Shown piece by piece: positions 9,736-41,727 of a DNA stretch of 49,391 nucleotides. Origin of the DNA: Octopus bimaculoides. Its lineage: Eukaryota. The DNA lies in contig NC_068996.1 in NCBI RefSeq assembly GCF_001194135.2, positions 12,750,535 through 12,799,925 of the forward strand, in the 5' to 3' direction. A model generated the notes under the pieces. That model did no database searches. It saw only the letters and a program-made list of their open reading frames with translations, and was not told where the DNA came from. Within the stretch, counting starts at the first letter, position 1, and every line of letters begins with the position of its first letter. The translations under genes and the position numbers were made by a program.

Positions 9736-10085
9736 TTACATTTGATGGCACAAATGACACGTAAGCATATTAGATGAACCCCATTTTCTGAAGAATATAT
9801 TCAGGAAAAATTGAGCACCAAGGACAAAATGGAAAGCCCAAAATATGGGAAGGCCCAACCTCTCATGTAGGATCCAGAAAGATTTCTTGTGATATATTTT
9901 TGGAAACAANNNNNNNNNNAAGGCCCAACCTCTCATGTAGGATCCAGAAAGATTTCTTGTGATATATTTTTGGAAACAAAAAAATTGTTAGGAAGGCCCA
10001 ACCTCTCATGTAGGATCCAGAAAGGTTTTTTGTGATATATTTTTGGAAGCAAAAAAAATTATATCTTATATGCCATCAAATGTAA
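9736..10085. mobile_element. Tc1/mariner-type MITE with internal 73-bp repeats
   Basis: Perfect 15-bp TIR TTACATTTGATGGCA flanked by TA on both sides; internal unit AGGCCCAACCTCTCATGTAGGATCCAGAAAG... at 9851, 9921 and 9994. Confidence 0.8.
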
Positions 10086-10512: not shown

Positions 10513-10824
10513 CTGAGAAAGTTATTTTGATAAAATCTTCATTATTTTCAATTTATTAGAAACAGTGGTGGCAGTATATACCAAGAGAAATATGCTCCCT
10601 AATAAAAGGGTTAATAAAATAATTTGTTTGAAAATTGAAAATCATAATCCATACAGAAGCCACCTGAAGAAGCCAAAATGTTGAAACTGTAACAATCCAG
10701 ACACCACTCTGACTATACTGGTGTATTATAATGGTAATTTTTTTATCTCGGAAATTCTGGCGGAAATGTCTTTTACTATTTAATTTTTCTTTATTTCAAC
10801 TAATTTTTTAATTTTTTAACCCAG

Positions 10825-10998
10825 GCTCAGATAACAAAATCATGGAATCACTACTCGCAATAGAAGCACAGCTTGATAAACTATATGCAACACCAGATCC
10901 TGAAGTACCTGAAAACGAAGTGAAGTTTATGTCCATCGTATCAGATCTAGCTGATAGAGAATTAGTCGTTACAATTAGCTGGGCAAAACAAGTACCTG
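10825..10998 (+). CDS. ERR: Estrogen-related receptor, internal coding exon (end of hinge, LBD helices 1-3); exon may start at 10825 or 10831
   Basis: T-rich tract then ccAG|gctcAG|ataac; donor CCTG|gtaagt at 10999. Reads DNKIMESLLAIEAQLDKLYATPDPEVPENEVKFMSIVSDLADRELVVTISWAKQVPG, matching the ERR pattern NKI..LL..E....YA.PDP and DLADRELVV.I.WAK..PG. Phase 1 at both ends. Confidence 0.95.
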
Positions 10999-12124
10999 GT
11001 AAGTGATTGTCTTGAGTATTAATTATTTCATATCAATTATTCTATATAATGAACACTAACAGCACAAAACAATAATGACAAAAGAAAAAAGCTAAGGTGA
11101 AGGAGCCTCTATTTGGTTATGCTTCCTGATGTTGTATATATAATAGCCAAATCATTTTTACTGATATGATTGGCAATTTGCTATGCTTAAGAAAACCTGC
11201 TCAGCTAAGTAAAAATTGAGGCCATCATATCATGACCACACCCGCTGCAAACAATCTGTCCCTGAGAAATTTCTCTCCCCAACAACCCACCTTCCCTCCA
11301 CCCTTATTCACCACTTGCTGCACTCTTCTCCTTTCCATCCCTTACTCTCTCTTTGCACCCTTGCAAACCTACCAGCACGTTATTTGTCCCTTTTTGCTCT
11401 CTTCTGCACAGCATAACCTTCTAACACCTCCTCTCTCTATTTGTGTCCACTCGCTATATTCCTCCTCTCCTCCACCTCCCACTCTCCTTTCACAGTCTCA
11501 CAAACTCACCTACCCACTCGTCCAATCCCATCCCTGGTTCCACTTCACTTATTTACACCTCCCTATAACTTGAGTGCAGCCCTGTCACATCTTCACCATC
11601 TTCTCACTCCCTTCACTGTCTCTCCTCCACTTTAAGACACTTATTTCTTACCCTCTCTTCAACTGGCAAATAAGGAAACATGGATATTAAACAGATGATG
11701 ATGTGGTACAAAACTATTTGGGCACTGTACCTATCAGAAGAAAAATAAAAGAATTAAAAGGATTCCTTCTAGGGACAGACAATTGGCAAAAACAACAGTA
11801 GCAATAAAATACTGAATAAGGGTCTCTTTTCCAGAAGAATTGAAGGAATTTGTTGGTAAACCACCAGTTTGAAACCTTGGGACTGTCTTTGGGTTCCATC
11901 ATCATCATCATCATCATCTGTTTAATGTGCATTTTTCCTTATTTGCATGGATATTATTATGATAGATATTTTTATGACTACATGCCCTTCTGTCAACAAC
12001 CCTCACCTAAGGTAATATTTTTCGTTGGCTGGACGTGTTTTCACAGAAGACTGAAAACAATTAACATCTCTTGTTCAATGGTAAGACTTGCTTTACCTTT
12101 ACTGTGTGATGTTAAAATGAAGTA

Positions 12125-12310
12125 AAACACACACACATACACACCTAACAAGTTTCCTACAGTTTCCATCTAGCAAGTCAACTCATGGTTTTGCTCAGCC
12201 TGGGGCTATCAGAGAAGACACTTGCTCAAGATTGCACACTGTGGGACTGAACCTAGAACCATGTGTTTTGGAAGCAAGCCTCTTATCAAGCACCCATGCC
12301 TGTGCCTATA
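12125..12310 (-). mobile_element. SINE family A, diverged 5' half
   Basis: AGAAGACACTTGCTCAAG...GTGGGACTGAACC...CATGCCTGTGCCTATA. Confidence 0.75.
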
Positions 12311-13382
12311 CAAAAAAAGTTTAGAAAAAGAAAAAAGAAAAAAAAGCATGTAAAAAAACAGTGATGTTGATATTATATTATCTAATGTTGTTTATCCTCC
12401 AGCTCATCATAATAATCCTGTTTGCTTTTAATCTTCCTCTGTTTATCATAATTCCGAACATCTGGATTGTACGATTCCATTGTCTGTACAACACCAAGAT
12501 TTGGTTTCAGGAACCCCATTTTGGCTATTCATATTTGCTATCATAATCTTTTGGTCACTGCCCAATATTCATCGCCATATGTAAGGTTAGGCAGGGAATC
12601 TGAATTGAAGATAGTGATTTTGCTTTTTTTTTTTTTTTTTTTTACCAACCTTTCTTCTTGTGAAGATCAAATGCTGGTGAAGAACTGAAATTAAAGATGC
12701 AATCAACTGGATATGTGATGTCTGAGATGGAATTTAAGCCTTTCTGCTATGAAACAAATATTTTGAATTGAACATTTAATAGGTCTTTAATGAAAAAAAT
12801 GGAGAAAGTGGGAGAAGAAATCATTAATTAAGTGAATTGATTAATTAGTTTGAGATTGAACTGTACTTGACAGTTAAGTAGTAAAGCTAGAGATAGATAG
12901 AGAGAAAGAGAGAGAGTGATAGAGGATGCAGAAGAGAGAGAGAGAGTTTTGTAGTGGAGACTCTTGGAGGTTCCGATTGATTATGTAATGACTGTCTTGT
13001 ACTGAATAAACTATTTTAAAACGTGGTAGAACTACATGTAGTTCTATCATAGAATTACATGTTTACATCCTCCACTGTAACCGGAACTGAAAGACTCACT
13101 GTGATAAAGCTTCATTCCCTCTCCCTGTTGGAATTAGTCCATGTTAGAGAGGAGAGGATGTTGCCTGCCAAAGGGGGTCAAACGTGGATGGAGAAAAGAA
13201 AACAGGAAAGAGATAAAGACAAGCACTTGCGCAGACCAGGACCCCCAAACTGTTTAGACAAAGTAGGTTGGTCGTTGGAATCTGTGGAGAGTCTGACATC
13301 GACCAAGCATTCAAGTTTCCAATGTATATATACAGATAGATAGAGAGAGAGAGATACGTATATACATGCATGCATATATATA

Positions 13383-13540
13383 CTCTCTGAGTGGTTGGCG
13401 TTAGGAAGGGCATCCAGCTGTAGAAACTCCGCCAAATTTAGATTGGAGCCTGGTGTTGCCATCCGGTTTCACCAGTCCTCAGTCAAATCGTCCAACCCAT
13501 GCTAGCATGGAAAGCGGACGTTAAACGATGATGATGATGA

Positions 13541-13544
<4 letters not shown>
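13383..13544 (+). mobile_element. RTE-like retroposon 3' tail ending in (GAT)n, young copy; diverged copies at about 2630-2730 (-), 3850-4100 (+), 4985-5125 (-), 5980-6215 (+), 24100-24200 (+), 43190-43330 (-) and 45095-45250 (-)
   Basis: AGGAAGGGCATCCAGCTGTAGAAAC...CCAACCCATGCTAGCATGGAAAGCGGACGTTAAAC-(GAT)n. The RTE assignment is from recalled similarity. Confidence 0.75.
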
Positions 13545-13588
<44 letters not shown>

Positions 13589-13590
<2 letters not shown>

Positions 13591-13828
13591 AATAATAAGC
13601 AACACGGATTTCAAAAGTGATTGCAGTACGCACGTTTCATGCTACTTCAATTTATTTAAGTAATGTGAGCATTACCTTAAATGCAATATGAAGAGCAATC
13701 TTCAGCTGCACGAAAAAATGTAGAAAAAAAGACATATTACAAATGTGGCAACATATTAAAACCAAGTGGGAGAGAGCAGAGGAAGAATATATAAGTCCAT
13801 CTTGACATAGCAGGGTCTATCAGGCTAC
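13589..13828 (-). mobile_element. Probable solo pseudo-LTR of a Penelope-like element in a (TA)n tract
   Basis: 240 bp of non-repetitive sequence bounded on both sides by (TA)n and carrying the 13622-13710 HHR. Confidence 0.6.
13622..13710 (-). ncRNA. Minimal type I hammerhead ribozyme, core intact, antisense to ERR
   Basis: Minus strand: TGCAG-CTGAAGA-[TTGCT CTTCA...TGAAG TAGCAT, long hairpin]-GAAA-CGTGCG-TA-CTGCA. Helix I 5 bp, self-complementary helix III ACGTGCGT, GUA triplet; the 10.1/11.1 pair is a U.U mismatch. Confidence 0.8.
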
Positions 13829-13985
13829 ATATATATATATATATATAGCTACTGTTAAGAGCAAAGTTTATCAACAATGGAATGGCGAAAGACAGTAAAC
13901 GAAACACAAAAATAGATTAAAGATTGTGTACCTGCTCTTTCTCATGTTCATGTGTGGGCGTGTGCTTACATATATGCATTATCGT

Positions 13986-14029
<44 letters not shown>

Positions 14030-15497
14030 GCTCAATAACGTTATCTTAGATCGTAATGATAGGGGAGCTAACTCTCCGTCGCGTTTATGATATTGATATT
14101 TCTCCTGTTGATTTAAAGATAGTTTTCCATAACAGCTTATGAAACTATTCACACACGTTATATATATATATATGTGTGTGTGTGTGTAATATATGTATGT
14201 ATGTATTTTATTGTAGTACATACAAAAGCAAGAATATATATATATATAATGTACATATGACGTGTGGGAGGGGGTACAACAGAACCTGTGTACGCCTGTT
14301 TGGGTAAGAATTCGTTTGCAGCTGTGTATTCAAAAGTCTGCAAGAAGGTTTAAAGAATTGTCTAGACAGTGGCTGTTATCCTTGAAAAGCAAGAATAGAT
14401 TCATTCCTGTTCTTGAAATGACAACTTTGTAGTGAATAGACGCTGTTCATAGTTCATTTGTAATTTAATCATTCAACCGTATATTGTATGGTTCAGTGAT
14501 TAAATTGTTGCAATCTTAATTAGAATATAACATTTTTTTTTTAAATGTCTATTATATTCTAGTTTTAAAAAAAATCTGTTTTATTATTTTGTGACAATAT
14601 TTCAAACAAAATACACTTCTTACATTTCAATTAAGTTTGAAAATGATCAAGAATTTGAAGGGATTTTAGCAAAATAACTAACTTTATTCATGTAATGATA
14701 TATTAGAATCACAACCTAGTAGAAAACTTTATTTAAATATGAAACACTTCAAAGCAGGTGGCCTTATGTGAAGGAAGCAAAGAGTAGTCACTGGCTGTTT
14801 AGTATCAATAGGTTAATTGTTTTGTTTTTTGTTTTTTTTTTTGTTTTTCAGTTCCTTCTTAAACATAATTAAGAGGTTAAGTAGCCAGGTTTCTAGAATT
14901 GAATTTGTTGAGTTGATATTTTATTCATTGTATCTCCTCAAGTTTTCCATATTCTGATCAGTCTGAAGAATTTAAACCAACTTGCTGAGAGCATATAGTA
15001 TTGTGAAAATGAATATAAAAATTGTTATTAAAAATAAACAGTTAATTATAAATATATCATTATACTTTGGAACAGCCATATTGCCAGAAGGAAAACACAC
15101 ACACACACGTATATACACAACAGTCATTCACTTCAATGTTAATTCCCTGATAATATAATCAAAAACTCAACTAATCCATCTCCAGTACGTGTGTTTGTTG
15201 GAAGTATGACCCTTCCAAAATATAATAATATTGGTCTCAACATATTGTTTCAGATCAAGATTCTAGCAAAATAAATTCACAAATGAAATATTAGAAATTC
15301 AATTTTTAAGTAGAAAGTGAATAATATTGTCTTAATATCTTTTGTGTTGATTTTGTCTTTGTTTATTCACCTCTAGGACATCTTAGAGAAACCTATAATT
15401 AAAGGTGTCCCAACTGTTTCCTTTTTCTTTAAAAAAATTTTTTTTAGACATAGAATATTATCTACAATCTTTTTTTTTTCTTTTTTGTTAACTTTAA

Positions 15498-15719
15498 CCC
15501 TTTTGATACCAACCTGCCTGAAACCAATTCTGGCTCTGTAGTACAAATGTCTTGTTTTCAAAAGTTCTTAATTAAAATCTTCTACCAAACCTTAGTCACA
15601 ATTTATGTTCCAAACATTAGGTTAATGATAACTAAGTTATTTTACTAAATTCTTTGTTATATTTAAAATTAATTGAATGAATCACAGAGCATCTCAACAG
15701 GAATATGGTAACAAAAGGG
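15498..15719. mobile_element. piggyBac-like MITE
   Basis: TTAA on both sides; TIRs CCCTTTTGATACC / GGTAACAAAAGGG (12/13). Confidence 0.85.
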
Positions 15720-16208
15720 TTAAGATAGTAAGATGTAATNNNNNNNNNNNNNNNNNNNNNNNNNNNNNNNNNNNNNNNNNNNNNNNNNNNNNNNNNNNNN
15801 NNNNNNNNNNNNNNNNNNNNNNNNNNNNNNNNNNNNNNNNNNNNNNNNNNNNNNNNNNNNNNNNNNNNNNNNNNNNNNNNNNNNNNNNNNNNNNNNNNNN
15901 NNNNNNNNNNNNNNNNNNNNNNNNNNNNNNNNNNNNNNNNNNNNNNNNNNNNNNNNNNNNNNNNNNNNNNNNNNNNNNNNNNNNNNNNNNNNNNNNNNNN
16001 NNNNNNNNNNNNNNNNNNNNNNNNNNNNNNNNNNNNNNNNNNNNNNNNNNNNNNNNNNNNNNNNNNNNNNNNNNNNNNNNNNNNNNNNNNNNNNNNNNNN
16101 NNNNNNNNNNNNNNNNNNNNNNNNNNNNNNNNNNNNNNNNNNNNNNNNNNNNNNNNNNNNNNNNNNNNNNNNNNNNNNNNNNNNNNNNNNNNNNNNNNNN
16201 AGATATCA

Positions 16209-16257
16209 CAAAAACTGTTACTCAGAATTTCATGTTTACGTTCATCGGACAGTTTTG
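16209..16257 (-). ncRNA. Decayed minimal hammerhead (U4C), left arm of a palindrome
   Basis: Minus strand: CAAAACTGT-CCGATGA-ACGTAAACAT-GAAA-TTCTGAG-TA-ACAGTTTTTG; helix I 8 bp. Confidence 0.75.
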
Positions 16258-16270
16258 CTTAGAATCTAAA

Positions 16271-16320
16271 CAAAACTGTCTGACAAATGGAAAAGTGAAA
16301 CTCTGAGTAACAGTCTTTTG
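16271..16320 (+). ncRNA. Decayed minimal hammerhead (G8A), right arm of a palindrome
   Basis: CAAAACTGT-CTGACAA-ATGGAAAAGT-GAAA-CTCTGAG-TA-ACAGTCTTTTG. Confidence 0.75.
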
Positions 16321-16451
16321 TTATATTTCTGCTGCTTTTAAATAAAGCATATTACTCTACCTCTTGTATTTGAGTACTATTTTTTCCACCTTATTTCACA
16401 TTTATGTGCTTACTCTGGTATATATATATATGTTTAAGCTGGTTCCCATGC

Positions 16452-16539
16452 ATTTCCCTGAAGAGAAGATTACATTTTTAACATCGCCGATTCCAATGGA
16501 TCGTATAAATTGTAATTCTTCGAAACATATGTTGGAAAT
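16452..16539 (+). ncRNA. Minimal type I hammerhead ribozyme, intact core, sense to ERR (intronic)
   Basis: Helix I ATTTCC/GGAAAT (6 bp); CTGAAGA 16458-16464; long helix II GAAGATTACA.../...TGTAATTCTTC with G10.1:C11.1; GAAA 16522-16525; palindromic helix III ACATATGT; GUU triplet, predicted cut 16533/16534. Confidence 0.88.
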
Positions 16540-16929
16540 AAAAGTATGCAGTTAACATATGCGTTTTACTCCATTCATTAAATTTATATATACTCAAGTA
16601 CCCAAAATATCAAGGAGTATCTACCTCATAAACAGGAGTTACACCACAGTTATTTTGTGATCTTTGCTACCCTGGTATCTATTAACCAATCTATTTTGTC
16701 CAAGTTATTTATTAATTAGGAGAAAATAAATACATATAATAATATATATATATATATATTGTTTTTATTATTATTATTGTTTTTATTGTTCTCTTAGTTG
16801 AAAAATAAACTGGTAAATTGACATAATACAATGTCTGCAAGTTGATGAGTACCACATATTCCCCTCCATTTTCTTATTGCTATATATAAAGGATAATAAT
16901 ATGTAATTTTTATCATTTTTACCCATCAG

Positions 16930-17205
16930 GTTTTGCCAGTCTCCCACTTGTTGACCAGATGAATCTCTTACAACATTCATGGCTAGAGATTCTATGCCTC
17001 AATCTTGCACATCGATCCTGCCCTTACAACCACTTCTTAAAATTTGCTGAGGACTTCAAAATCGACCAAGAGCAAGCTGCAAACACATATGGTTGCTCAC
17101 CTAAAATGGACAACCTTAGTAGAAAATTGGCCAGCAAAATAACGAGTCTTGGAGTGACTAAAGAAGAGTATATATTATTGAAAGCCTTAATTCTTTGCAA
17201 TCCTG
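16930..17205 (+). CDS. ERR: Estrogen-related receptor, internal coding exon (LBD helices 4-9)
   Basis: Acceptor tttttacccatcAG|g, donor AATCCTG|gttagt. Continues the frame: (G)FASLPLVDQMNLLQHSWLEILCLNLAHRSCPYNHFLKFAEDFKIDQEQAANTYGCSPKMDNLSRKLASKITSLGVTKEEYILLKALILCNP. 276 nt, phase 1-1. Confidence 0.96.
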
Positions 17206-17485
17206 GTTAGTTTTAAATCTTTGATTTGAATGATAAAAGTTCTTTGAAATCTGATAGTTTATTTTTTGGGTTTCATTTTTAATAATGGCCACTTACTTAT
17301 TTACCCTTTAACCTTCAGATTACTCTGTCAAAGGTAATGCTTCATAGCTTTGAAATTTTTATGATGTGAATGTTTATTTTTAGAATGACATTGTAGGGTT
17401 GGTAAGAAAGGCCAGATCTAGCCAGGTTAAAGGCTAAAAGGATATATTTATGTATGCTATGCATATGTATATGTGAATGTATGTG

Positions 17486-17526
<41 letters not shown>

Positions 17527-18517: not shown

Positions 18518-18759
18518 ATGTGACTTCTGACAGTAATGGCTCAGTGAAACAACTTCAAGACAAATTCCATGATACTCTCATTGAATATGTAAAAACAAAG
18601 CACACTGGCAACATGCGTCGGTTGGGTCATCTCCTCATGCTTTTACCACACTTAACACATGTAAAACTGCTGGCAAGACAGTATTGGTTTGATGTAAAAA
18701 AGGACGGCCGCGTCATCATGCACAAGCTGTTTTTAGAGATGCTGGAAGCTGATTCTTGA
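18518..18759 (+). CDS. ERR: Estrogen-related receptor, last coding exon (LBD helices 9-12, AF-2)
   Basis: Acceptor ttttctttgtgatttctAG|at. Reads (D)VTSDSNGSVKQLQDKFHDTLIEYVKTKHTGNMRRLGHLLMLLPHLTHVKLLARQYWFDVKKDGRVIMHKLFLEMLEADS-TGA. MHKLFLEMLEA is the NR3 AF-2 motif as seen in ERRs. Confidence 0.96.
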
Positions 18760-18848: not shown

Positions 18849-19920
18849 NNNNNNNNNNNNNNNNNNNNNNNNNNNNNNNNNNNNNNNNNNNNNNNNNNNN
18901 NNNNNNNNNNNNNNNNNNNNNNNNNNNNNNNNNNNNNNNNNNNNNNNNNNNNNNNNNNNNNNNNNNNNNNNNNNNNNNNNNNNNNNNNNNNNNNNNNNNN
19001 NNNNNNNNNNNNNNNNNNNNNNNNNNNNNNNNNNNNNNNNNNNNNNNNNNNNNNNNNNNNNNNNNNNNNNNNNNNNNNNNNNNNNNNNNNNNNNNNNNNN
19101 NNNNNNNNNNNNNNNNNNNNNNNNNNNNNNNNNNNNNNNNNNNNNNNNNNNNNNNNNNNNNNNNNNNNNNNNNNNNNNNNNNNNNNNNNNNNNNNNNNNN
19201 NNNNNNNNNNNNNNNNNNNNNNNNNNNNNNNNNNNNNNNNNNNNNNNNNNNNNNNNNNNNNNNNNNNNNNNNNNNNNNNNNNNNNNNNNNNNNNNNNNNN
19301 NNNNNNNNNNNNNNNNNNNNNNNNNNNNNNNNNNNNNNNNNNNNNNNNNNNNNNNNNNNNNNNNNNNNNNNNNNNNNNNNNNNNNNNNNNNNNNNNNNNN
19401 NNNNNNNNNNNNNNNNNNNNNNNNNNNNNNNNNNNNNNNNNNNNNNNNNNNNNNNNNNNNNNNNNNNNNNNNNNNNNNNNNNNNNNNNNNNNNNNNNNNN
19501 NNNNNNNNNNNNNNNNNNNNNNNNNNNNNNNNNNNNNNNNNNNNNNNNNNNNNNNNNNNNNNNNNNNNNNNNNNNNNNNNNNNNNNNNNNNNNNNNNNNN
19601 NNNNNNNNNNNNNNNNNNNNNNNNNNNNNNNNNNNNNNNNNNNNNNNNNNNNNNNNNNNNNNNNNNNNNNNNNNNNNNNNNNNNNNNNNNNNNNNNNNNN
19701 NNNNNNNNNNNNNNNNNNNNNNNNNNNNNNNNNNNNNNNNNNNNNNNNNNNNNNNNNNNNNNNNNNNNNNNNNNNNNNNNNNNNNNNNNNNNNNNNGCAA
19801 AACAAAAAAAAATCAAACAAAACAACAGCAAAAAAACTTCAAAAATTTATCATTTTTTAAAAAAAAAATCTGGTAAGCTTATTATATCATTTGTTTACAT
19901 CACTGACAAAAAAAAATAAA
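18760..19920 (+). other. ERR 3' UTR, proximal part, up to a candidate AATAAA (19915-19920); true end unknown and possibly several kb further
   Basis: Follows the TGA stop. AATAAA is seen after the 18849-19796 gap, but such hexamers are common in this AT-rich DNA. Confidence 0.4.
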
Positions 19921-20613
19921 TAATAATAATTAAAGTCAAAACTCCCCAAATTCCCTGAACCCCTTCAGAACTCCAGACAACACTGGCTAACTCAGTGGAC
20001 CCTAATTGAAACATTATTAGGTGACATTTTCATTGATTTTTTTCTTTTTTAATATTTTTTTTCCCTCCATGGTTGACTGGGCAATGTTGACTGAGTGATT
20101 TAAGTTGTGTGCATTTTTTTTTTTATTTTTAGAATTTTGTAGCATGTTAACAATGGTTTCAAACCTGACCTCAGGCATTCATCATTTTTGTCTTGAGGAG
20201 AAAAATTCTGAAGTAATTTTGTAGTATTTTTTTGGTGTGTTTTATATTACATGTTCCATGTTTCTGTAGATAGCAAGAAGAAAAATAATAATAATAACGA
20301 ACTCATATTTATGGACATGCATTGTTGTTATATCAGTAAAGGGTGGAATGTAGAAATGGTAAATAATTTCAAAGTTTCAAGCCAAAACAAAGAAAAAGAA
20401 AAGAAAAACAGCCAAATGTGTGTTAGAGATATATGAATATGTGTGTGTGTGTGTATATATATATATATGTATACACACACATTCACACATACAAACATAT
20501 ATACAATCATACATTTATATGCATGTATATATGTGAATGTATGTGTAAGTATTGTTGTAAGTCCATTTTCATTCATATTATTTTATAGTATTTTATATTA
20601 TGGGTGTGTGTGC

Positions 20614-20654
<41 letters not shown>

Positions 20655-21219
20655 TACACACACACACATGCAGTTGTGTGTCTGTGTGTGTGTATAATAT
20701 AACGAATAAATTTTTTTGCCTCTTATGTGATATTTGACTGAAAAAGAAATTCATCAAAATAAGAGATTTCACATCATCTTTGTCAACTAATGTCTATTTA
20801 CCATTTTAAAAAGAATTCAAAATACTTCAAAGGTAAACACCATTTACCTTGTTCTTCTAAGATAAACACAGACAATAAGAGAAAAGAAGCATTATTAAAG
20901 TTATTAAATATAAAAAAAAAACTCATAAAAACATACACATTTTCATACATTGTCATTCTTTCTCAAACTTTCTCAACATCTCTCTTACTTTCACTTTTTC
21001 CTTTTTCTCTGTCTTTCTCAGGCACATATACATACACACATGCACACACACACACATGCAAATATAGAGAACAAAGAAAAACAATATAGCAAAGGAATAT
21101 GTCATTTCATTTTTTTTTTTTGTAGTTAAGTTTGAATACAATCCAAATTTAAAATATTAATTAAATCGTTTCATTAACATTGAAAAGAGTATGAGTGAGT
21201 TTCATTTTCACACATGTGT

Positions 21220-22798: not shown

Positions 22799-23196
22799 NN
22801 NNNNNNNNNNNNNNNNNNNNNNNNNNNNNNNNNNNNNNNNNNNNNNNNNNNNNNNNNNNNNNNNNNNNNNNNNNNNNNNNNNNNNNNNNNNNNNNNNNNN
22901 NNNNNNNNNNNNNNNNNNNNNNNNNNNNNNNNNNNNNNNNNNNNNNNNNNNNNNNNNNNNNNNNNNNNNNNNNNNNNNNNNNNNNNNNNNNNNNNNNNNN
23001 NNNNNNNNNNNNNNNNNNNNNNNNNNNNNNNNNNNNNNNNNNNNNNNNNNNNNNNNNNNNNNNNNNNNNNNNNNNNNNNNNNNNNNNNNNNNNNNNNNNN
23101 NNNNNNNNNNNNNNNNNNNNNNNNNNNNNNNNNNNNNNNNNNNNNNNNNNNNNNNNNNNNNNNNNNNNNNNNNNNNNNNNNNNNNNNNNNNNNNNN

Positions 23197-23228
<32 letters not shown>

Positions 23229-23708
23229 AATGATGTATATATGTGTGCATGTGTGTATGTATATAGACACTCGGTAGTATTTTTTTTATTTTTTTTCTCT
23301 CTCTCTCTTTTCAACATTTAGTTTTTGGATGAGAAACTATTTGATAATTTTTACCAGTATTTTACGACAAATATCTGTGTGTAAATATATATATATATAT
23401 ATGTGTATGTCTATGTTTTATGTGTGCATAATTTGTTTGTTTTTTTTTCATGTGTATCATGGGGCATGTATGTCTGTGTGTGTGTGTGTGTTAGTGTGTA
23501 TTTGCACGCATATATAGACTAATTATACACGTGTGTATATATATATGTTTATACATGTATACATATTCACACACACACACACAGATGTATGTATATAAGT
23601 GTGATTATATATATATGTATATATATATACATGTGTGTGTATGTTTTTTATGTTTGTTTTCAAAATTAAATAGGCTTCATTGTTTTAAATTTAGTATGTG
23701 TGTGTATG

Positions 23709-23751
<43 letters not shown>

Positions 23752-24381
23752 GTATGTATATACACATATATATAATTATACAAAAAACATACAGATATAT
23801 ATATATATATATATGTATACACACAGGCAATGCACAACACACACACCTACACACACACACATATATATATAGGTAGCTATTTAGATAGATAGTTACATTT
23901 CAGACAATAACTTTGTGACTCTATGTATCGTACACACTGTTCTTATTAGCAGATGTTTTCTTGCAGCGATTTGTACATTCTGTAGGCAAATGTTATTTTT
24001 CCAAGGGGGATTTTTTTTTCTTGTTTTGTTTGTTTGTATTTTCTGTATAATCATATGTATAGGCATATGTGTAGGCGAATGTATAAATGTATGATCATAA
24101 AGAGGAGCTGACAAGCGATATATGGATAGCTTGGCTAAAGCTGTCCTACAGACCCGTCCAAAACCCATGTCGTCATGGAATTGAAGGACGTTAAATAAAA
24201 TTTAAAAAAACAAAAAAAAAACAAAGAAAAAAAAGAAAATACACCATTCAAGAATGGTATTGGTGAAGGTAGTGGCAGAGATGGTGGTGATTTAGTTGTT
24301 GTTGTTGCTGTTGTAACAGTAGTAGAGGTGATGGTGTTGGTGGCATTGACGACGATAATAATGATAGTGATGATGATGGTA

Positions 24382-25643: not shown

Positions 25644-26895
25644 CANNNNNNNNNNTCATTATTATTATTATTATTGTCTTTTTGTTATCATCATTATCAT
25701 CATTGTTATCATCAACTCCATCACCACCACAATCATCATTTACTCCTCTTCACTCTTATTATCATTATTATTATTAACATTATTATTATTATTATTATTG
25801 TCATCATCGTCTTCATCATTATCATTGCAGTCTTGCCCTTGGCTACTTGCTGGTCTTAAAATAGAGTCCTAAGTCTATTTGCTCGCTGCCTTAGCATATC
25901 TTTAAACCCTTCCTCAGAATTGTTGCAATTTCATATTTAAAAAGGAGAAAAAAAAATCCTNNNNNNNNNNNNNNNNNNNNNNNNNNNNNNNNNNNNNNNN
26001 NNNNNNNNNNNNNNNNNNNNNNNNNNNNNNNNNNNNNNNNNNNNNNNNNNNNNNNNNNNNNNNNNNNNNNNNNNNNNNNNNNNNNNNNNNNNNNNNNNNN
26101 NNNNNNNNNNNNNNNNNNNNNNNNNNNNNNNNNNNNNNNNNNNNNNNNNNNNNNNNNNNNNNNNNNNNNNNNNNNNNNNNNATATATATATATATATATA
26201 TATATATAGCCGATTATTATTTTTAAACAATTATTATTATTATTATTATTATTACTACTACTACTACTACTACTACTATACTACTACTACTTTAATAACC
26301 ATTAAAGCATTTTTACAATCATGCTCCTTGTCATCACTTTCATCTCTACCATTGCTAAAGACTAGTGTTTATTTCACTAATATAGTGCTTTTTGAAATAA
26401 TTTTATCATTGCTTATCCCTCTCTACTTTTCATTATCTCCATTCTTTCCCTTTTTCTCTCTCTCTCTCTCTCTCTCTCATGTTCTATTTCTCACTTTCTT
26501 AATCTCTTCTTATAAATGTTAGAAGCTATTATTAAAATTTAACCACATTTTAGAAATCATCACTGTATGCATACATAAGTGTATGTGTATATATGTATAT
26601 ATATATACACATGCGCATGCGTGCGCATACACCCACACACACACACTTATATGTTATAGACATGAGTAGCCCACAGAAACATCCAGATGTCCTGGAAGGG
26701 CTATATAAAGTAAATATATGCATATTTTGTTTCTATGAGTATATCTGAAATTCATTTGACCCATTTCATTATTATACCTTGACTATGGTCATAGCTCCAA
26801 GTAAATTCTACATGATTGTAGAGCACTCTCAGTGCGTAAAAGCTTTGATTAGATGAATATTAAGATGTGCCTTGTGAGGTTCATGGGTGTCTAGC

Positions 26896-36548: not shown

Positions 36549-36601
<53 letters not shown>

Positions 36602-38415
36602 NNNNNNNNNNNNNNNNNNNNNNNNNNNNNNNNNNNNNNNNNNNNNNNNNNNNNNNNNNNNNNNNNNNNNNNNNNNNNNNNNNNNNNNNNNNNNNNNNNN
36701 NNNNNNNNNNNNNNNNNNNNNNNNNNNNNNNNNNNNNNNNNNNNNNNNNNNNNNNNNNNNNNNNNNNNNNNNNNNNNNNNNNNNNNNNNNNNNNNNNNNN
36801 NNNNNNNNNNNNNNNNNNNNNNNNNNNNNNNNNNNNNNNNNNNNNNNNNNNNNNNNNNNNNNNNNNNNNNNNNNNNNNNNNNNNNNNNNNNNNNNNATAT
36901 ATATATATATAATCAGCAGAAGTTACAAAGTGTTGTCTGCTGATTAATTAAAAAGTACAAAAATATATATATACACTTATGTTTTGAGTTCTATGTTCTT
37001 GTTTGCTTTACCAAACTTCTCTCTCACTCTCTCTCTCTCACTCTCTCTCTCTCACTCTCTTTCTCCCTTCCTCTCTCTCTTCATATATATATATGTATAT
37101 ATATATACATGCATGTTTGTGTGTAGCTATATGCATGTATATTCCCCAGAGGATGTATTGCCATCATCTGTAGAGAATGTTTTGGTTCCTTTACCTTTTC
37201 CTCCTCGCTCTAACTCTATACCTTTGCAGTTATCTTTTCTCATTGTGTATGTGCATACATACGTATATATTAATATACATATATATAAATGTGTGTGAGT
37301 GTGTGTGTGAAACCCAAAATAGGCAACAAGTTTTCTTTTAAATATAGATACGTCTTACGTTGAAGTTTGACCCTTTCGTTTATAAGGATTTACCATATTC
37401 CCTCATTTGCCCTTTTAGTTTGGAACAATAACATTCCGAAATCCATTAACATTTCAACTGGAATGTCTTTGACCAAAAATCTGCAGAATCAAGCCTTGTT
37501 CTGGGTTAGGTAGGCTGTGTGCTTGTGTGGGAGTACTAGATAACAGATGATTCTGTCTATCAAACGAAACAGTTTCTAAACCTTCTGGAAATGTTACAGA
37601 CTTCTCTTCCATAATTTGCTATGCATTCGTTTTGATTTCCGTTATGTGAATTCAAAGAGACAAGCTTGGCTTTTTTTACTACATCTGTTCCACTTCTAAT
37701 ATGCATTGATATTTATTATACTGTCTTAGAGATTCTTCTTAAGATATGTATCTCTAAAACATCACCTGCAGCAGAGGTTTGGCTAAGTCTGTTATGAATA
37801 TTTTTAAAGGATTGTGAGGAAAGAATTCTGTTTTTTTTTTTTTTTAAATATTTTTTAATTCTTTTTTTTTTTAGATTCTGCATCCAATCTGATATTTGCA
37901 GATATTGCATCCACTGCAACTTCATTTAGAATATGGTAATAATAGTAGAATGTTAGAAATATATGCCTGCATGTTTGAGTACTTGCGTGTGTATATATAT
38001 ATGTAAATATGCATGTGTAAATATCATACACACACAGAGGCAAAATCTTTCCCTCCCACTCTCTCTTAATCTCTGTTTTTCTCTGTTTTCCTCACTCTAC
38101 TAACTTTCCTCTCTGTTTTACTTTCTCTCTCTTCCTGTCCTCAGTGGCATTGAATAAGAAAAGAAATTAATTAGAATTGTGAGGAAATACATGAATTTTT
38201 TTCAAACTATAAGTAATAAAATAGTAAAATTGAATGCAATGAATTTAATTTGATTGACAGGAGCTTTATTGTCCTAGAAATAATAATGAACACACTTGTT
38301 AAATGTTGTTTTACATTTTATAGATGCACACAAACACACACATGTATACATACATGTATATGATTGTGTATATATATATAGTATGCATGTGTGTAAATGA
38401 GTTCATAAATAAATT

Positions 38416-38600: not shown

Positions 38601-40317
38601 TACTTGGCCAAATTTTTAGGAAAAATAAAAATTAGACAATAAAAAAAAGCGAATGCTTTTCTTTGGAGAGGAAAAAAAAGTGGAATTTATTATTTAGAAT
38701 CCTGTAAAGGGTTGTTTAAACAAAGGATATTGAATTTTTTAATGCCACTAAGCAAATTAACTCCCTTTAAATTTTTTTCATTTTCTTTTAAATTTATTTA
38801 CAATTTACAAACTTCTTAGACATAAATTTTTGCTAGTGGAGGCCATTGTTAGAATTCATAGAATTTGGATGTTTTTACTTTATTACTAATATTTTATTAA
38901 GTTTGTAATTATACAAAGATCAATCAATATTAATAAGGGCACCTGTGTGTTGTCTATACACATGTACATTATACATGCATACATCTACACACATGCATTT
39001 ACATGTATGCATGTATATGTATATTTGTATGTATATTTATGTATATGCTAGCATGGAACACAGACGTTAAATGATGATGAATATTATATTCTAAAAAGAA
39101 TCACAGAAAGAAACAGAAATATAGATAGAATGAGTGATAAACAATAGTGGTTGTTGTCATATCAAACAATTCTTACAGCAGCCAAAAAAAAAAAAAANNN
39201 NNNNNNNNNNNNNNNNNNNNNNNNNNNNNNNNNNNNNNNNNNNNNNNNNNNNNNNNNNNNNNNNNNNNNNNNNNNNNNNNNNNNNNNNNNNNNNNNNTAT
39301 ATATATATACATATATATACACATTAGGTTCAAGGGTCATGAATTGGTTGTTATTTAGTAGGTGACACTCACTCTTCGCTTCTTTTGAACAGAGGTTAAC
39401 AAAAGAAAGGTGAACTCTAAGACTTCATCTTAGAGTTTGGTTTACTCCTGCATTTATGCATACATACACATACCTACATACATACATACATACATGCATG
39501 TGTTATGTGTGTATGTTCATATACGTTCATGCATGCATACATATATATGTGTATGCATGTATGTATATGTATATGTATCTCCGTAGTTGTGTATCAAATT
39601 TGTAAAAGATTTTTTTTTAAACCCATTCCAAGTATGTTTTTTTTCTTAAATGTTTTTTTTGTTATGTATGTTTGTTCATTTGTTTGTTTGTTTTTTTTTA
39701 AGCCTAAACAAAACAACAAAAAAAAAAAAACCAAAACAAAAAGAGCAACTGTGTGAGTTAATCACCACCTGACATTTTTTTAACATTTTTTTTTTTAATC
39801 ATATTCCAGAGTGGTTTATTGTAGAGGAAAAAAAAATTGTTTTTTTTTCAGATAGTACGGAAAGATGTGTGATAATGTTTATTATAGATGGCAGATTGTA
39901 TCATATATTATAGTAAAAAATGTTGATTTAACACTATAATAACGCGTCCTTGTTTTAATTCATTTACGTATAATGCATTGTTGTTGTAATTCCTTTGTGC
40001 AACAACATGTACACGCATAAATGCAAAGCAATTTAATTCACTTGGTGTGCATGTTGTTGCTGTTGTTGCCTTTCTTTTCACATACCAGATATATATGTTG
40101 CCATTGTCATCAGTATCATCACCATCTTCGTCATCGTAGATCATCATCATTGTCATTAACCATCGTCATTGTCAACGTTGTCATCATCATCATTATCAAC
40201 ATCAGTAATCATCGTCGTTGTCATTGTCATCATAATAATAATCATCATCATCCTTACCACCACCATCATCACTGTCATTATTGTTGTCATCTTCACAACC
40301 AACACTGCCACCATCAT

Positions 40318-40349
<32 letters not shown>

Positions 40350-41727
40350 CCACCATTGTTGACATCATCATCATCATCACCATCATNNNNNNNNNNNNNN
40401 NNNNNNNNNNNNNNNNNNNNNNNNNNNNNNNNNNNNNNNNNNNNNNNNNNNNNNNNNNNNNNNNNNNNNNNNNNNNNNNNNNNNNNNNNNNNNNNNNNNN
40501 NNNNNNNNNNNNNNNNNNNNNNNNNNNNNNNNNNNNNNNNNNNNNNNNNNNNNNNNNNNNNNNNNNNNNNNNNNNNNNNNNNNNNNNNNNNNNNNNNNNN
40601 NNNNNNNNNNNNNNNNNNNNNNNNNNNNNNNNNNNNNNNNNNNNNNNNNNNNNNNNNNNNNNNNNNNNNNNNNNNNNNNNNNNNNNNNNNNNNNNNNNNN
40701 NNNNNNNNNNNNNNNNNNNNNNNNNNNNNNNNNNNNNNNNNNNNNNNNNNNNNNNNNNNNNNNNNNNNNNNNNNNNNNNNNNNNNNNNNNNNNNNNNNNN
40801 NNNNNNNNNNNNNNNNNNNNNNNNNNNNNNNNNNNNNNNNNNNNNNNNNNNNNNNNNNNNNNNNNNNNNNNNNNNNNNNNNNNNNNNNNNNNNNNNNNNN
40901 NNNNNNNNNNNNNNNNNNNNNNNNNNNNNNNNNNNNNNNNNNNNNNNNNNNNNNNNNNNNNNNNNNNNNNNNNNNNNNNNTACATACATATATTAATATG
41001 CACACGCATACATACAGAAATGCACACATACATACATACATACTACATATGCACACACACACATGTACACGCACATGTACATACACATACATACATGAAT
41101 GCATGCATCCATCTATCAGTACATACATACGTACATACACACAAACACATACATACATATATTAATATGCACATACATACAGAAATGCACACATACATAC
41201 TACATATGCCCACACACACACATACACATACGTACATATGTACACACATACATAGAAGCAGACATGCAAAAATATCTTGTTGATGTTGTTGAAATTCCGG
41301 TTCTTTCTCTATTGGCAAGAAGTCTTGAAATAAAACTTAATAATGTCATACATACAGGCACACACACATGGGATTCTTACAGTTTTCGTCTGCTAAATCT
41401 GCTTACAGGGTTTTTGGTCAGCCTGATCAGCAGAAGACACTTGCACGAGGTGCCATGCATTGGAATTGAACCTGAAACCATGTTAGTTAGGAAGCAAGCT
41501 TCTTACCATACAGCCATGCCTCTGTGTGTGTGTGTGTGTTAGATTAATTTAGAGCTGCTGCTTCTCTTTGTGGCAACCAGGAGTTTTATATTTTTACTTT
41601 TACTGGTTGTATTAAAAAACAGAAACATGATCCTCTGGGTTTCCACAGAAGGAAGCTTCAACACAAACTGACTTACTTGCATCTTCAATATTAACAGCAA
41701 TAAATGCCAAAACTCTATAATATGTGT

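What the first reader, a model, noticed from the sequence alone, without database searches (positions are those of the whole stretch)
16452..16539. Core-perfect hammerhead ribozyme in sense orientation 390 nt upstream of an ERR coding exon
Every conserved position is present, with G10.1:C11.1, a 6-bp helix I, an extended helix II and palindromic ACAUAUGU helix III. The predicted cut is after GUU at 16533. No inverted partner is evident nearby to sequester it. Established: minimal PLE HHRs cleave weakly as monomers and well as dimers, U17 is a permitted but slower site, and intronic self-cleaving ribozymes exist in animal genes (amniote intronic HHRs, the CPEB3 HDV-like ribozyme). Inference: this motif could cut nascent ERR pre-mRNA, possibly depending on transcript concentration via trans-dimerisation, and so tune ERR output or splicing.
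Basis: partly seen in the sequence, partly recalled or inferred. Interest (0 to 1): 0.85.

Follow-up and report, generated by a model that had tools for sequence, protein, structure and literature searches.

The report
Lone hammerhead ribozyme motif in ERR intron
The sequence really does contain every letter and helix of a hammerhead self-cutting RNA, in the sense strand of an intron of an estrogen-related-receptor gene. It is a single copy of the dimer-dependent kind that animal retroelements scatter through genomes, and nothing found here shows that it cuts or regulates the gene.

Summary
Observation confirmed. Window 16452-16539 (+) reads as a complete type-I hammerhead: 6-bp helix I, core CUGAAGA, G10.1:C11.1, a 5+5-bp helix II with one bulged U and a 36-nt distal insert, GAA, palindromic ACAUAUGU helix III, and U17 with the cut at 16533/16534. 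It lies in the sense strand of a 5.9-kb intron, 391 nt before an ERR ligand-binding-domain exon.

It is the only descriptor hit in the window. Chance gives about 8e-4 such hits per window, or 1e-5 with the G:C pair. That is still about 45 per 2.7-Gb genome without the G:C requirement.

Nothing supports function. No Rfam hammerhead family matches, even at E<=10. The fold is no more stable than shuffles (z=-0.3). With native flanks, helices I and III have probability <=0.06, and the active fold is about 2.5 kcal/mol above the MFE. No second copy, reverse transcriptase or endonuclease remnant lies nearby. No relative with an alignable intron could be reached.

Published single copies with such short helix III cleave weakly or not at all. 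Slow intronic hammerheads do not block splicing.

Best reading: a solitary retroelement-type hammerhead relic. Rivals: a chance motif, or a domesticated ribozyme. Low to moderate interest.

The parts
16452..16457 (+). Helix I, 5' strand (AUUUCC, positions 2.6-2.1)
   Evidence: Pairs with 16534-16539 over 6 bp. Pair probability is 0.57-0.96 in the isolated 88-mer but <=0.06 with >=50 nt of flank.
16458..16464 (+). Core strand C3 U4 G5 A6 A7 G8 A9 (CUGAAGA)
   Evidence: Read directly. It is the only CUGANGA in the window that sits in a three-helix context.
16465..16521 (+). Helix II. G10.1:C11.1 plus 4 bp, a bulged U at 16516, 5 more bp, then a 36-nt distal insert with a 6-bp inner hairpin
   Evidence: Pairs are listed. 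This is the only element that stays stable in every context (probability 0.7-1.0). It is much longer than the 4-8 bp helix II of described metazoan HHRs (PMC4209133).
16522..16524 (+). Core G12 A13 A14
   Evidence: Read directly.
16525..16532 (+). Helix III. Self-complementary ACAUAUGU, from A15.1 to U16.1
   Evidence: Zero-loop palindrome. Within one molecule it forms only 2 bp plus an AUAU loop, with probability 0.45 isolated and <=0.03 in context. ACATATGT occurs 10 times in the window, so the palindrome is partly a by-product of (TA)n-rich sequence.
16533..16534 (+). U17 and G1.1. The predicted scissile bond is 16533/16534 (triplet GUU)
   Evidence: Read directly. No cleavage data exist.
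16534..16539 (+). Helix I, 3' strand (GGAAAU)
16447..16451 (+). Possible closing stem of helix I. CAUGC pairs with GUAUG at 16544-16548 beyond an AAAA bulge at 16540-16543
   Evidence: Appears in the HHR-constrained fold. By my estimate about 0.3 would arise by chance given the freedom in loop size, so this is weak evidence.
16419..16435 (+). Upstream (TA)n run. It is a predicted competitor for the helix III strand and a possible insertion-target microsatellite
   Evidence: 16426-16435 pairs with 16523-16532 in the MFE of the flanked sequence. (TA)n runs at 16419-16431 and 16742-16759 bracket a 310-nt, 30.6% GC segment. Only 4% of the window lies in such an interval.
10999..16929 (+). The ERR intron that holds the motif (includes the N gap 15740-16200)
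   Evidence: Upstream exon found by tblastn at 10824-10998, with donor GT at 10999. Acceptor AG is at 16928-16929.
16930..17206 (+). ERR ligand-binding-domain exon downstream of the motif
18518..18759 (+). Last ERR coding exon, with the stop codon

Best explanation
This is a solitary type-I hammerhead motif of the kind carried by animal retroelements (non-LTR retrozymes and Penelope-like elements). It was left in the sense strand of an ERR intron, probably by an old insertion into (TA)n-rich sequence.

Shown: the complete core, three helices, the G10.1:C11.1 pair, a 6-bp helix I and a short palindromic helix III.

Inferred mechanism: like its relatives, it can reach an active shape only when two copies pair their ACAUAUGU strands into a shared helix III. 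Only one copy is present, the helix II is oversized, and the flanks compete for the helix I and III strands. It is therefore expected to be inactive or a very slow cleaver of ERR pre-mRNA, a passenger with no demonstrated effect on ERR output.
For: - Motif and coordinates were read directly, and it is the only descriptor hit in the window.
- It is unlikely by chance per window: 0 of 1500 shuffles, 0 of 539 decoy cores at (5,4,2) or better, 7.7e-4 per Markov window, and 1.2e-5 with the G:C pair.
- It carries hallmarks that PMC4209133 lists as arguing against random motifs: G10.1-C11.1 and a palindromic 15.2-16.2/loop 3.
- It also has the canonical metazoan type-I layout: 6-bp helix I and a 1-2-bp helix III with a small palindromic loop.
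- Cephalopod genomes hold Penelope elements, and the giant squid has 235 Rfam Hammerhead_1 loci (PMC6962438). Most such motifs occur as single dispersed copies (PMC4209133).
- The motif sits in a 310-nt, 31% GC segment between two (TA)n runs. This fits retrozyme monomers of about 300 bp and under 45% GC (PMC7229834). PLE clades also show an insertion bias for microsatellites, which is (TA)n in Naiads (PMC8557442).
- Inactivity is inferred from four results. There is no second copy. The isolated fold has z=-0.3. Helix I and III probability is <=0.06 in context, and the active fold is +2.5 kcal/mol. Single copies of such HHRs cleave poorly (PMC4209133, PMC7229834).
Against: - No related copy was found anywhere. 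The window has none. An ORF read across the motif has no homologue in two protein libraries. A metagenome pattern scan gave only 3 chance matches. None of these resources seems to hold a close cephalopod genome, so family membership is untested.
- No RT or GIY-YIG remnant appears in the 20 N-free ORFs >=90 aa that were scanned, or in the three sense frames of 13300-15739.
- No Rfam hammerhead family matches even at E<=10.
- Helix II, at 10 bp plus a 36-nt insert, is atypical.
- The unpaired nucleotide between A9 and G10.1 that typifies PLE min-HHRs is absent.
- The 300-nt unit is not unusually structured (z=-1.46).
Confidence: 0.5

Rival explanations
1. Chance motif. AT-rich, microsatellite-laden intronic sequence happens to spell the 11 core letters in a context that can be drawn as three helices. 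There is no ribozyme ancestry and no activity.
For: - Genome-wide, the Markov rate of 7.7e-4 per window at the candidate's helix lengths means about 45 such hits in a 2.7-Gb genome. How many windows the first stage read is unknown.
- The fold is no more stable than shuffles (z=-0.3).
- Rfam does not match.
- The long helix II spacing is what chance hits tend to have.
- The palindrome ACATATGT occurs 10 times in the window, against about 1.7 expected from base composition by my estimate.
- GAAGAGAAGA is a low-complexity duplication.
- No family member was found.
Against: - With G10.1:C11.1 required, the rate falls to 1.2e-5 per window, under 1 per genome.
- Decoy cores on the real sequence gave nothing at (5,4,2) or better.
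- The 6-bp helix I and palindromic helix III match the known metazoan architecture (PMC4209133).
- Real HHR motifs number hundreds to thousands in many animal genomes, so the prior for a real one per window exceeds the chance rate.
Confidence: 0.3
2. Domesticated intronic ribozyme. The motif cleaves nascent ERR pre-mRNA, perhaps through trans-dimerisation of nascent transcripts, and so modulates splicing or output, as proposed for the amniote RECK, CTCL and DTNB intronic hammerheads.
For: - It lies in the sense strand, in an intron, 391 nt from a coding exon.
- The core is intact.
- The predicted homodimer is 11.8 kcal/mol more stable than two monomers, a nominal Kd of about 5 nM under 1 M salt parameters. 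Local dimerisation at a transcription site is therefore not thermodynamically absurd.
- There is precedent for domesticated intronic HHRs (PMC6155905).
Against: - No conservation evidence exists.
- No tertiary loop-loop contacts are recognisable. Helix III is unstable and the site is GUU.
- Competing intramolecular folds are predicted.
- The amniote intronic HHRs are ultraconserved (PMC6155905), and from my own recollection they cleave well as monomers. Neither is shown here.
- Slow hammerhead cleavage inside an intron left splicing unaffected in vivo (PMC2995048, citing Dye 2006 and Fong 2009).
- In Xenopus genomes, retrozymes are depleted from introns and exons (bioRxiv 10.64898/2026.07.22.740005), which suggests such insertions are tolerated rather than recruited.
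Confidence: 0.08
3. Edge of a tandem retrozyme array hidden by the assembly gap. Further copies lie in the 461-N gap (15740-16200), 250 nt upstream, so that read-through transcripts could form active dimers in cis.
For: - Repeats often cause gaps in assemblies, and tandem or complex PLE insertions are noted to break short-read assemblies (PMC8557442).
- The gap lies within one monomer length of the motif.
Against: - The sequence on either side of the gap shows no similarity to the motif-bearing segment.
- The stretch between the gap and the motif holds an unrelated foldback hairpin.
Confidence: 0.07

Closest known systems
Canonical metazoan type-I hammerheads of non-LTR retrozymes and satellite repeats (newt/axolotl satellite 2, mussel and coral retrozymes; PMC7229834, PMC4209133)
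   Same: Type-I topology, with the open ends in helix I. A 6-bp helix I. A 1-2-bp helix III capped by a small palindromic loop, which implies action as a dimer. G10.1:C11.1. A low-GC unit of about 300 nt.
   Different: A single copy rather than a tandem array. Helix II is 10 bp with a bulge and a 36-nt insert, not 4 bp with a short loop. No recognisable loop 1/loop 2 contacts. No Rfam match. No circRNA or expression evidence.
Minimal hammerheads in the pseudo-LTRs of Penelope-like elements (Cervera and de la Pena 2014, PMC4209133)
   Same: Longer than usual helix II. A bulged nucleotide in mid helix II and a short palindromic helix III, as in the Drosophila virilis variant. G10.1:C11.1. Mostly found as dispersed single motifs. 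Poor activity as single copies.
   Different: No RT or GIY-YIG ORF or remnant nearby. No unpaired nucleotide between A9 and G10.1. Helix I is 6 bp rather than 4-5 bp (2 bp in the D. virilis variant).
Ultraconserved intronic hammerheads of amniotes (HH9 in RECK, HH10 in CTCL, also DTNB; PMC6155905)
   Same: A sense-strand type-I hammerhead inside an intron of a protein-coding gene, thought to derive from retroelement HHRs.
   Different: Those are conserved across classes of vertebrates and have conserved tertiary contacts (PMC6155905). From my own recollection they also have a stable helix III and cleave as monomers. None of this is shown here.
CPEB3 HDV-like intronic ribozyme
   Same: A self-cleaving motif in an intron of a regulatory gene.
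   Different: A different ribozyme class. It is conserved in mammals and has demonstrated, slow cleavage.

Membership tests
Hammerhead ribozyme (type I) | Conserved core: C3 U4 G5 A6 N7 G8 A9, G12 A13 A14, A15.1-U16.1, H17 | tested here: met
   Read directly. Descriptor hit.
Hammerhead ribozyme (type I) | Three helices radiating from the core, open at helix I | tested here: inconclusive
   They form in the MFE of the isolated 88-mer. However z=-0.3, and with flanks helices I and III have probability <=0.06 and the HHR fold is +2.5 kcal/mol.
Hammerhead ribozyme (type I) | Match to a curated covariance model (Rfam Hammerhead_1 and relatives) | tested here: not met
   No hit at gathering score in the window. 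No hammerhead family at E<=10 in 16300-16700.
Hammerhead ribozyme (type I) | Site-specific self-cleavage giving 2',3'-cyclic phosphate and 5'-OH ends | not testable with these tools
   Needs in vitro transcription or end mapping.
Hammerhead ribozyme (type I) | Loop 1/loop 2 tertiary contacts needed for fast cleavage at physiological Mg2+ | tested here: inconclusive
   No canonical loops. There is only a possible AAAA bulge after 6 bp of helix I and a bulged U after 5 bp of helix II. No sequence match to known contact motifs.
PLE pseudo-LTR min-HHR | Lies in a repeat that flanks an RT plus GIY-YIG ORF, or a truncated remnant of one | tested here: not met
   No RT or GIY-YIG Pfam hit in the 20 N-free ORFs >=90 aa scanned across the window, nor in the sense frames of 13300-15739. 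Heavily decayed remnants could escape.
PLE pseudo-LTR min-HHR | Unpaired nucleotide between A9 and G10.1 | tested here: not met
   A9 (16464) is followed directly by G10.1 (16465), which pairs with C11.1 (16521).
PLE pseudo-LTR min-HHR | G10.1-C11.1 pair and palindromic 15.2-16.2/loop 3 | tested here: met
PLE pseudo-LTR min-HHR | Member of a genome-wide consensus family with covariation | not testable with these tools
   No close cephalopod genome turned up in any collection searched. Indirect attempts found nothing.
Non-LTR retrozyme | Tandem repeats of about 170-400 bp, each with a type-I HHR | tested here: not met
   Single copy in the window. The 461-N gap 250 nt upstream leaves a small loophole.
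Non-LTR retrozyme | Low-GC unit of about 300 nt | tested here: inconclusive
   A 310-nt, 30.6% GC segment lies between (TA)n runs. The whole window is 34% GC, so this does not discriminate.
Domesticated intronic hammerhead (amniote HH9/HH10 type) | Sense strand of an intron of a conserved gene | tested here: met
   ERR exons on the + strand at 10824-10998, 16930-17206 and 18518-18759.
Domesticated intronic hammerhead (amniote HH9/HH10 type) | Conservation at the orthologous intron across species | tested here: inconclusive
   The closest relative reachable (L001) shares only the last exon at 78% nt, and its contig does not reach this intron. More distant orthologous-exon contigs L005-L009 have no motif above chance and no intron similarity. 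Sister octopods were not available.

The most novel reading that the evidence does not exclude
The motif is a retroelement-derived hammerhead domesticated in a cephalopod nuclear-receptor gene. It would be conserved in octopod ERR introns. It would cleave nascent pre-mRNA when transcripts are dense enough at the locus to dimerise through the ACAUAUGU palindrome, so that ERR output would respond to its own transcription rate.
Probability: 0.06. Interest if true: 0.75.

Novelty: new member of a known kind. Interest (0 to 1): 0.3.

Why it matters
If it is only a solo relic, it is one more of the hundreds to thousands of hammerhead motifs that retroelements have spread through animal genomes, and it has no special consequence. 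It would matter only if it proved to be conserved and active. It would then be the first invertebrate counterpart of the amniote intronic hammerheads, sitting in a metabolic master-regulator gene, and would give a concrete case of concentration-dependent (dimer-gated) self-cleavage in gene control.

Tried and rejected
- Rfam scans at gathering score and at E<=10: no hammerhead family. The whole-window E-value scan listed only microsatellite-driven false miRNA matches among the 150 best of 240.
- Second copy or tandem partner in the window, by blastn and descriptor: none.
- Orthologous intron. The ERR exon peptide found only exon-sized ORFs from unannotated contigs. The best, L001, shares just the last exon at 78% nt. 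The window's own exon ORF is not on record. Four more orthologous-exon contigs from more distant molluscs gave only chance-level relaxed hits and no intron similarity.
- Repeat family through translated ORFs. The 63-aa ORF across the motif has no homologue in the word-indexed or the exhaustive library.
- Metagenome DNA pattern scan: 3 unrelated chance matches.
- Penelope-like element remnants: no RT or GIY-YIG.
- tRNA-derived SINE head: no tRNA.
- Retrozyme-like compact fold of the 300-nt unit: z=-1.46, not significant.
- The (TA)n bracketing, taken as a target-site signature, is suggestive only. There are 50 such runs in 46 kb, and 4% of positions are bracketed in the same way.

Full report
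**1. What is in the sequence**

Window 16452-16539 (+) reads AUUUCC-CUGAAGA-[G AAGA UUACA ... UGUAA (U) UCUU C]-GAA-ACAUAUGU-U^GGAAAU. Mapped to hammerhead numbering, every conserved position is present.
- Core: C3 U4 G5 A6 A7 G8 A9 (16458-16464) and G12 A13 A14 (16522-16524).
- A15.1 (16525) pairs with U16.1 (16532), and U17 is at 16533.
- The scissile bond would be 16533/16534.
- G10.1 (16465) pairs with C11.1 (16521).
- Helix I is 6 bp.
- Helix II is 5 bp, a bulged U at 16516, 5 more bp, and a 36-nt distal insert with its own 6-bp hairpin.
- Helix III is the self-complementary octamer ACAUAUGU. Within one molecule it can form only 2 bp closed by AUAU.
- A possible closing stem for helix I (16447-16451 with 16544-16548, beyond an AAAA bulge) appears in the constrained fold. 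Given the freedom in loop size, it is not statistically notable.

**2. Genomic setting**

The motif lies in the sense strand of an ERR gene.
- Exons on the + strand are 10824-10998, 16930-17206 and 18518-18759 with the stop codon.
- The encoded ligand-binding domain matches ERR-gamma structures at E=2.8e-31, against about 1e-16 for RXR.
- The host intron is 10999-16929. The motif ends 391 nt before the acceptor.
- The window is a draft assembly with nine N runs. One of them (15740-16200) lies 250 nt upstream of the motif.

**3. Is it more than chance?**

A descriptor requiring the core letters and three helices finds exactly this one site on both strands.
- 1500 dinucleotide shuffles gave 0.025, 0.005 and 0 hits per window at helix thresholds (4,3,2), (5,4,2) and (6,5,2).
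- 539 decoy cores (permuted core letters) run on the real sequence gave 7 relaxed hits and none at (5,4,2) or better.
- 85,800 Markov-simulated windows gave 7.7e-4 per window at the candidate's level, and 1.2e-5 when G10.1:C11.1 is also required.

For this window the motif is therefore not a chance expectation. Over a genome of about 2.7 Gb, roughly 45 chance hits are expected at that level without the G:C pair, and under 1 with it. The palindrome is less remarkable than a Markov null suggests: ACATATGT occurs 10 times in the window because (TA)n-derived sequence is everywhere.

**4. Does it look functional?**

- No Rfam family reaches gathering score in the window.
- No hammerhead family appears even at E<=10 in 16300-16700.
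- The isolated 88-mer does fold into the three-way junction, but at -13.6 kcal/mol it is no more stable than shuffles (z=-0.3).
- With 50-200 nt of native flank, the pair probabilities of helices I and III fall to <=0.06. The hammerhead-constrained fold is 2.5-2.6 kcal/mol above the MFE.
- Two competitors account for this. The (UA)n run at 16426-16435 pairs with 16523-16532. The duplicated GAAGA|GAAGA lets core G5-A9 pair with the UCUUC strand of helix II.
- A homodimer is predicted to be 11.8 kcal/mol more stable than two monomers, a nominal Kd of about 5 nM under 1 M salt parameters. Dimerisation is physically plausible but needs a second molecule, because the window holds no second copy.

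**5. Ancestry**

I looked for signs of a retroelement.
- No RT or GIY-YIG domain appears in the 20 N-free ORFs >=90 aa that were scanned, or in the sense frames of the 2.4 kb before the gap.
- There is no tRNA-like head.
- The 300-nt unit has no unusually compact fold (z=-1.46).
- The motif does sit in a 310-nt, 30.6% GC segment bracketed by (TA)n runs at 16419-16431 and 16742-16759. This fits retrozyme monomers of about 300 bp and low GC (PMC7229834), and the microsatellite insertion bias of PLE clades, which is (TA)n in Naiads (PMC8557442). With 50 (TA)n runs in 46 kb, 4% of positions are bracketed in the same way, so this is only a hint.

Family membership could not be tested, because no close cephalopod genome turned up in any collection searched.
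- An ORF read across the motif has no homologue in either protein library.
- A metagenome pattern scan gave three unrelated matches.

**6. Conservation**

- The ERR exon peptide retrieved only exon-sized ORFs from unannotated contigs.
- The closest one (L001, 96% aa) shares just the last exon at 78% nucleotide identity and no intron sequence.
- Contigs with the orthologous downstream exon from more distant molluscs (L005-L009) carry no motif above chance, and nothing similar to the intron.
- The decisive comparison with sister octopods could not be run.

**7. What the literature says**

- Canonical metazoan type-I hammerheads have a 6-bp helix I, a 4-bp helix II, and a 1-2-bp helix III with a small palindromic loop. 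They act as dimers.
- PLE min-HHRs have longer helix II, G10.1-C11.1 and palindromic 15.2-16.2. They mostly occur as dispersed single motifs, and a single motif showed no detectable cleavage (PMC4209133).
- Axolotl HHRs in monomeric repeats cleave only 6-22% in an hour, whereas dimeric constructs cleave efficiently (PMC7229834).
- Cephalopods carry Penelope elements, and the giant squid has 235 Rfam Hammerhead_1 loci (PMC6962438).
- Domesticated intronic hammerheads in amniotes are ultraconserved (PMC6155905).
- An intron cut by a slow hammerhead is still spliced normally, while only a fast ribozyme aborts processing (PMC2995048, citing Dye 2006 and Fong 2009).
- In Xenopus genomes, retrozymes are depleted from introns (bioRxiv 10.64898/2026.07.22.740005).

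**8. Verdict**

In detail: this is a core-complete, sense-strand hammerhead motif of the dimer-dependent metazoan type.
- Best explanation (about 0.5): a solitary relic of a retroelement-borne hammerhead, inactive or very slow as a single copy, and a passenger in the ERR intron.
- Chance motif: about 0.3.
- Hidden tandem array in the assembly gap: about 0.07.
- Domesticated regulator of ERR: about 0.08.

The regulatory reading has no support yet, and it faces the splicing-tolerance data. It is cheap to test by comparing octopod introns and by monomer-versus-dimer cleavage assays.

Noticed in passing
window 16205-16322: A 118-nt near-perfect foldback hairpin (arms 16210-16263 and 16265-16318, 81% complementary). 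RNA MFE is -54.4 kcal/mol and z=-10.8 against shuffles. It is a single copy in the window and abuts the N gap, in the same ERR intron, about 130 nt upstream of the hammerhead motif. It could be a MITE or foldback element, or a hairpin-RNA precursor.
   Followed up: partly
window 10824-10998, 16930-17206, 18518-18759 (+): Three consecutive ligand-binding-domain exons of an ERR (NR3B) gene, with GT-AG boundaries. No 100% identical or annotated cephalopod ERR protein was returned by the protein search.
   Followed up: partly
whole window, e.g. 865-909, 13543-13588, 17490-17523, 20434-20677, 23197-23871, 36553-36601: Very dense (TA)n and (CA)n microsatellites: 50 (TA)>=5 runs in 46 kb. They produce about 240 sub-threshold false matches to microRNA families (mir-297, mir-466, mir-3149 and others) in an E-value Rfam scan.
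   Followed up: yes
window 9910-9919, 15740-16200, 18849-19796, 22799-23196, 25646-25655, 25961-26181, 36602-36896, 39198-39297, 40387-40980: Nine N runs (3,037 N in all) mark this as a gapped draft assembly. Several abut (TA)n runs, so repeat content next to the gaps is unknown.
   Followed up: no
window 16460-16469: Tandem duplication GAAGA|GAAGA spans the core/helix II boundary. It gives the UCUUC strand two registers, one of which buries core positions G5-A9.
   Followed up: yes
L001 (ENA ERZ21867824 ctg5556l) 1499-1774: A contig in an ENA metagenome-type assembly encodes the last ERR exon at 96% amino-acid and 78% nucleotide identity to the window. It presumably comes from another cephalopod present in that sample.
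   Followed up: partly
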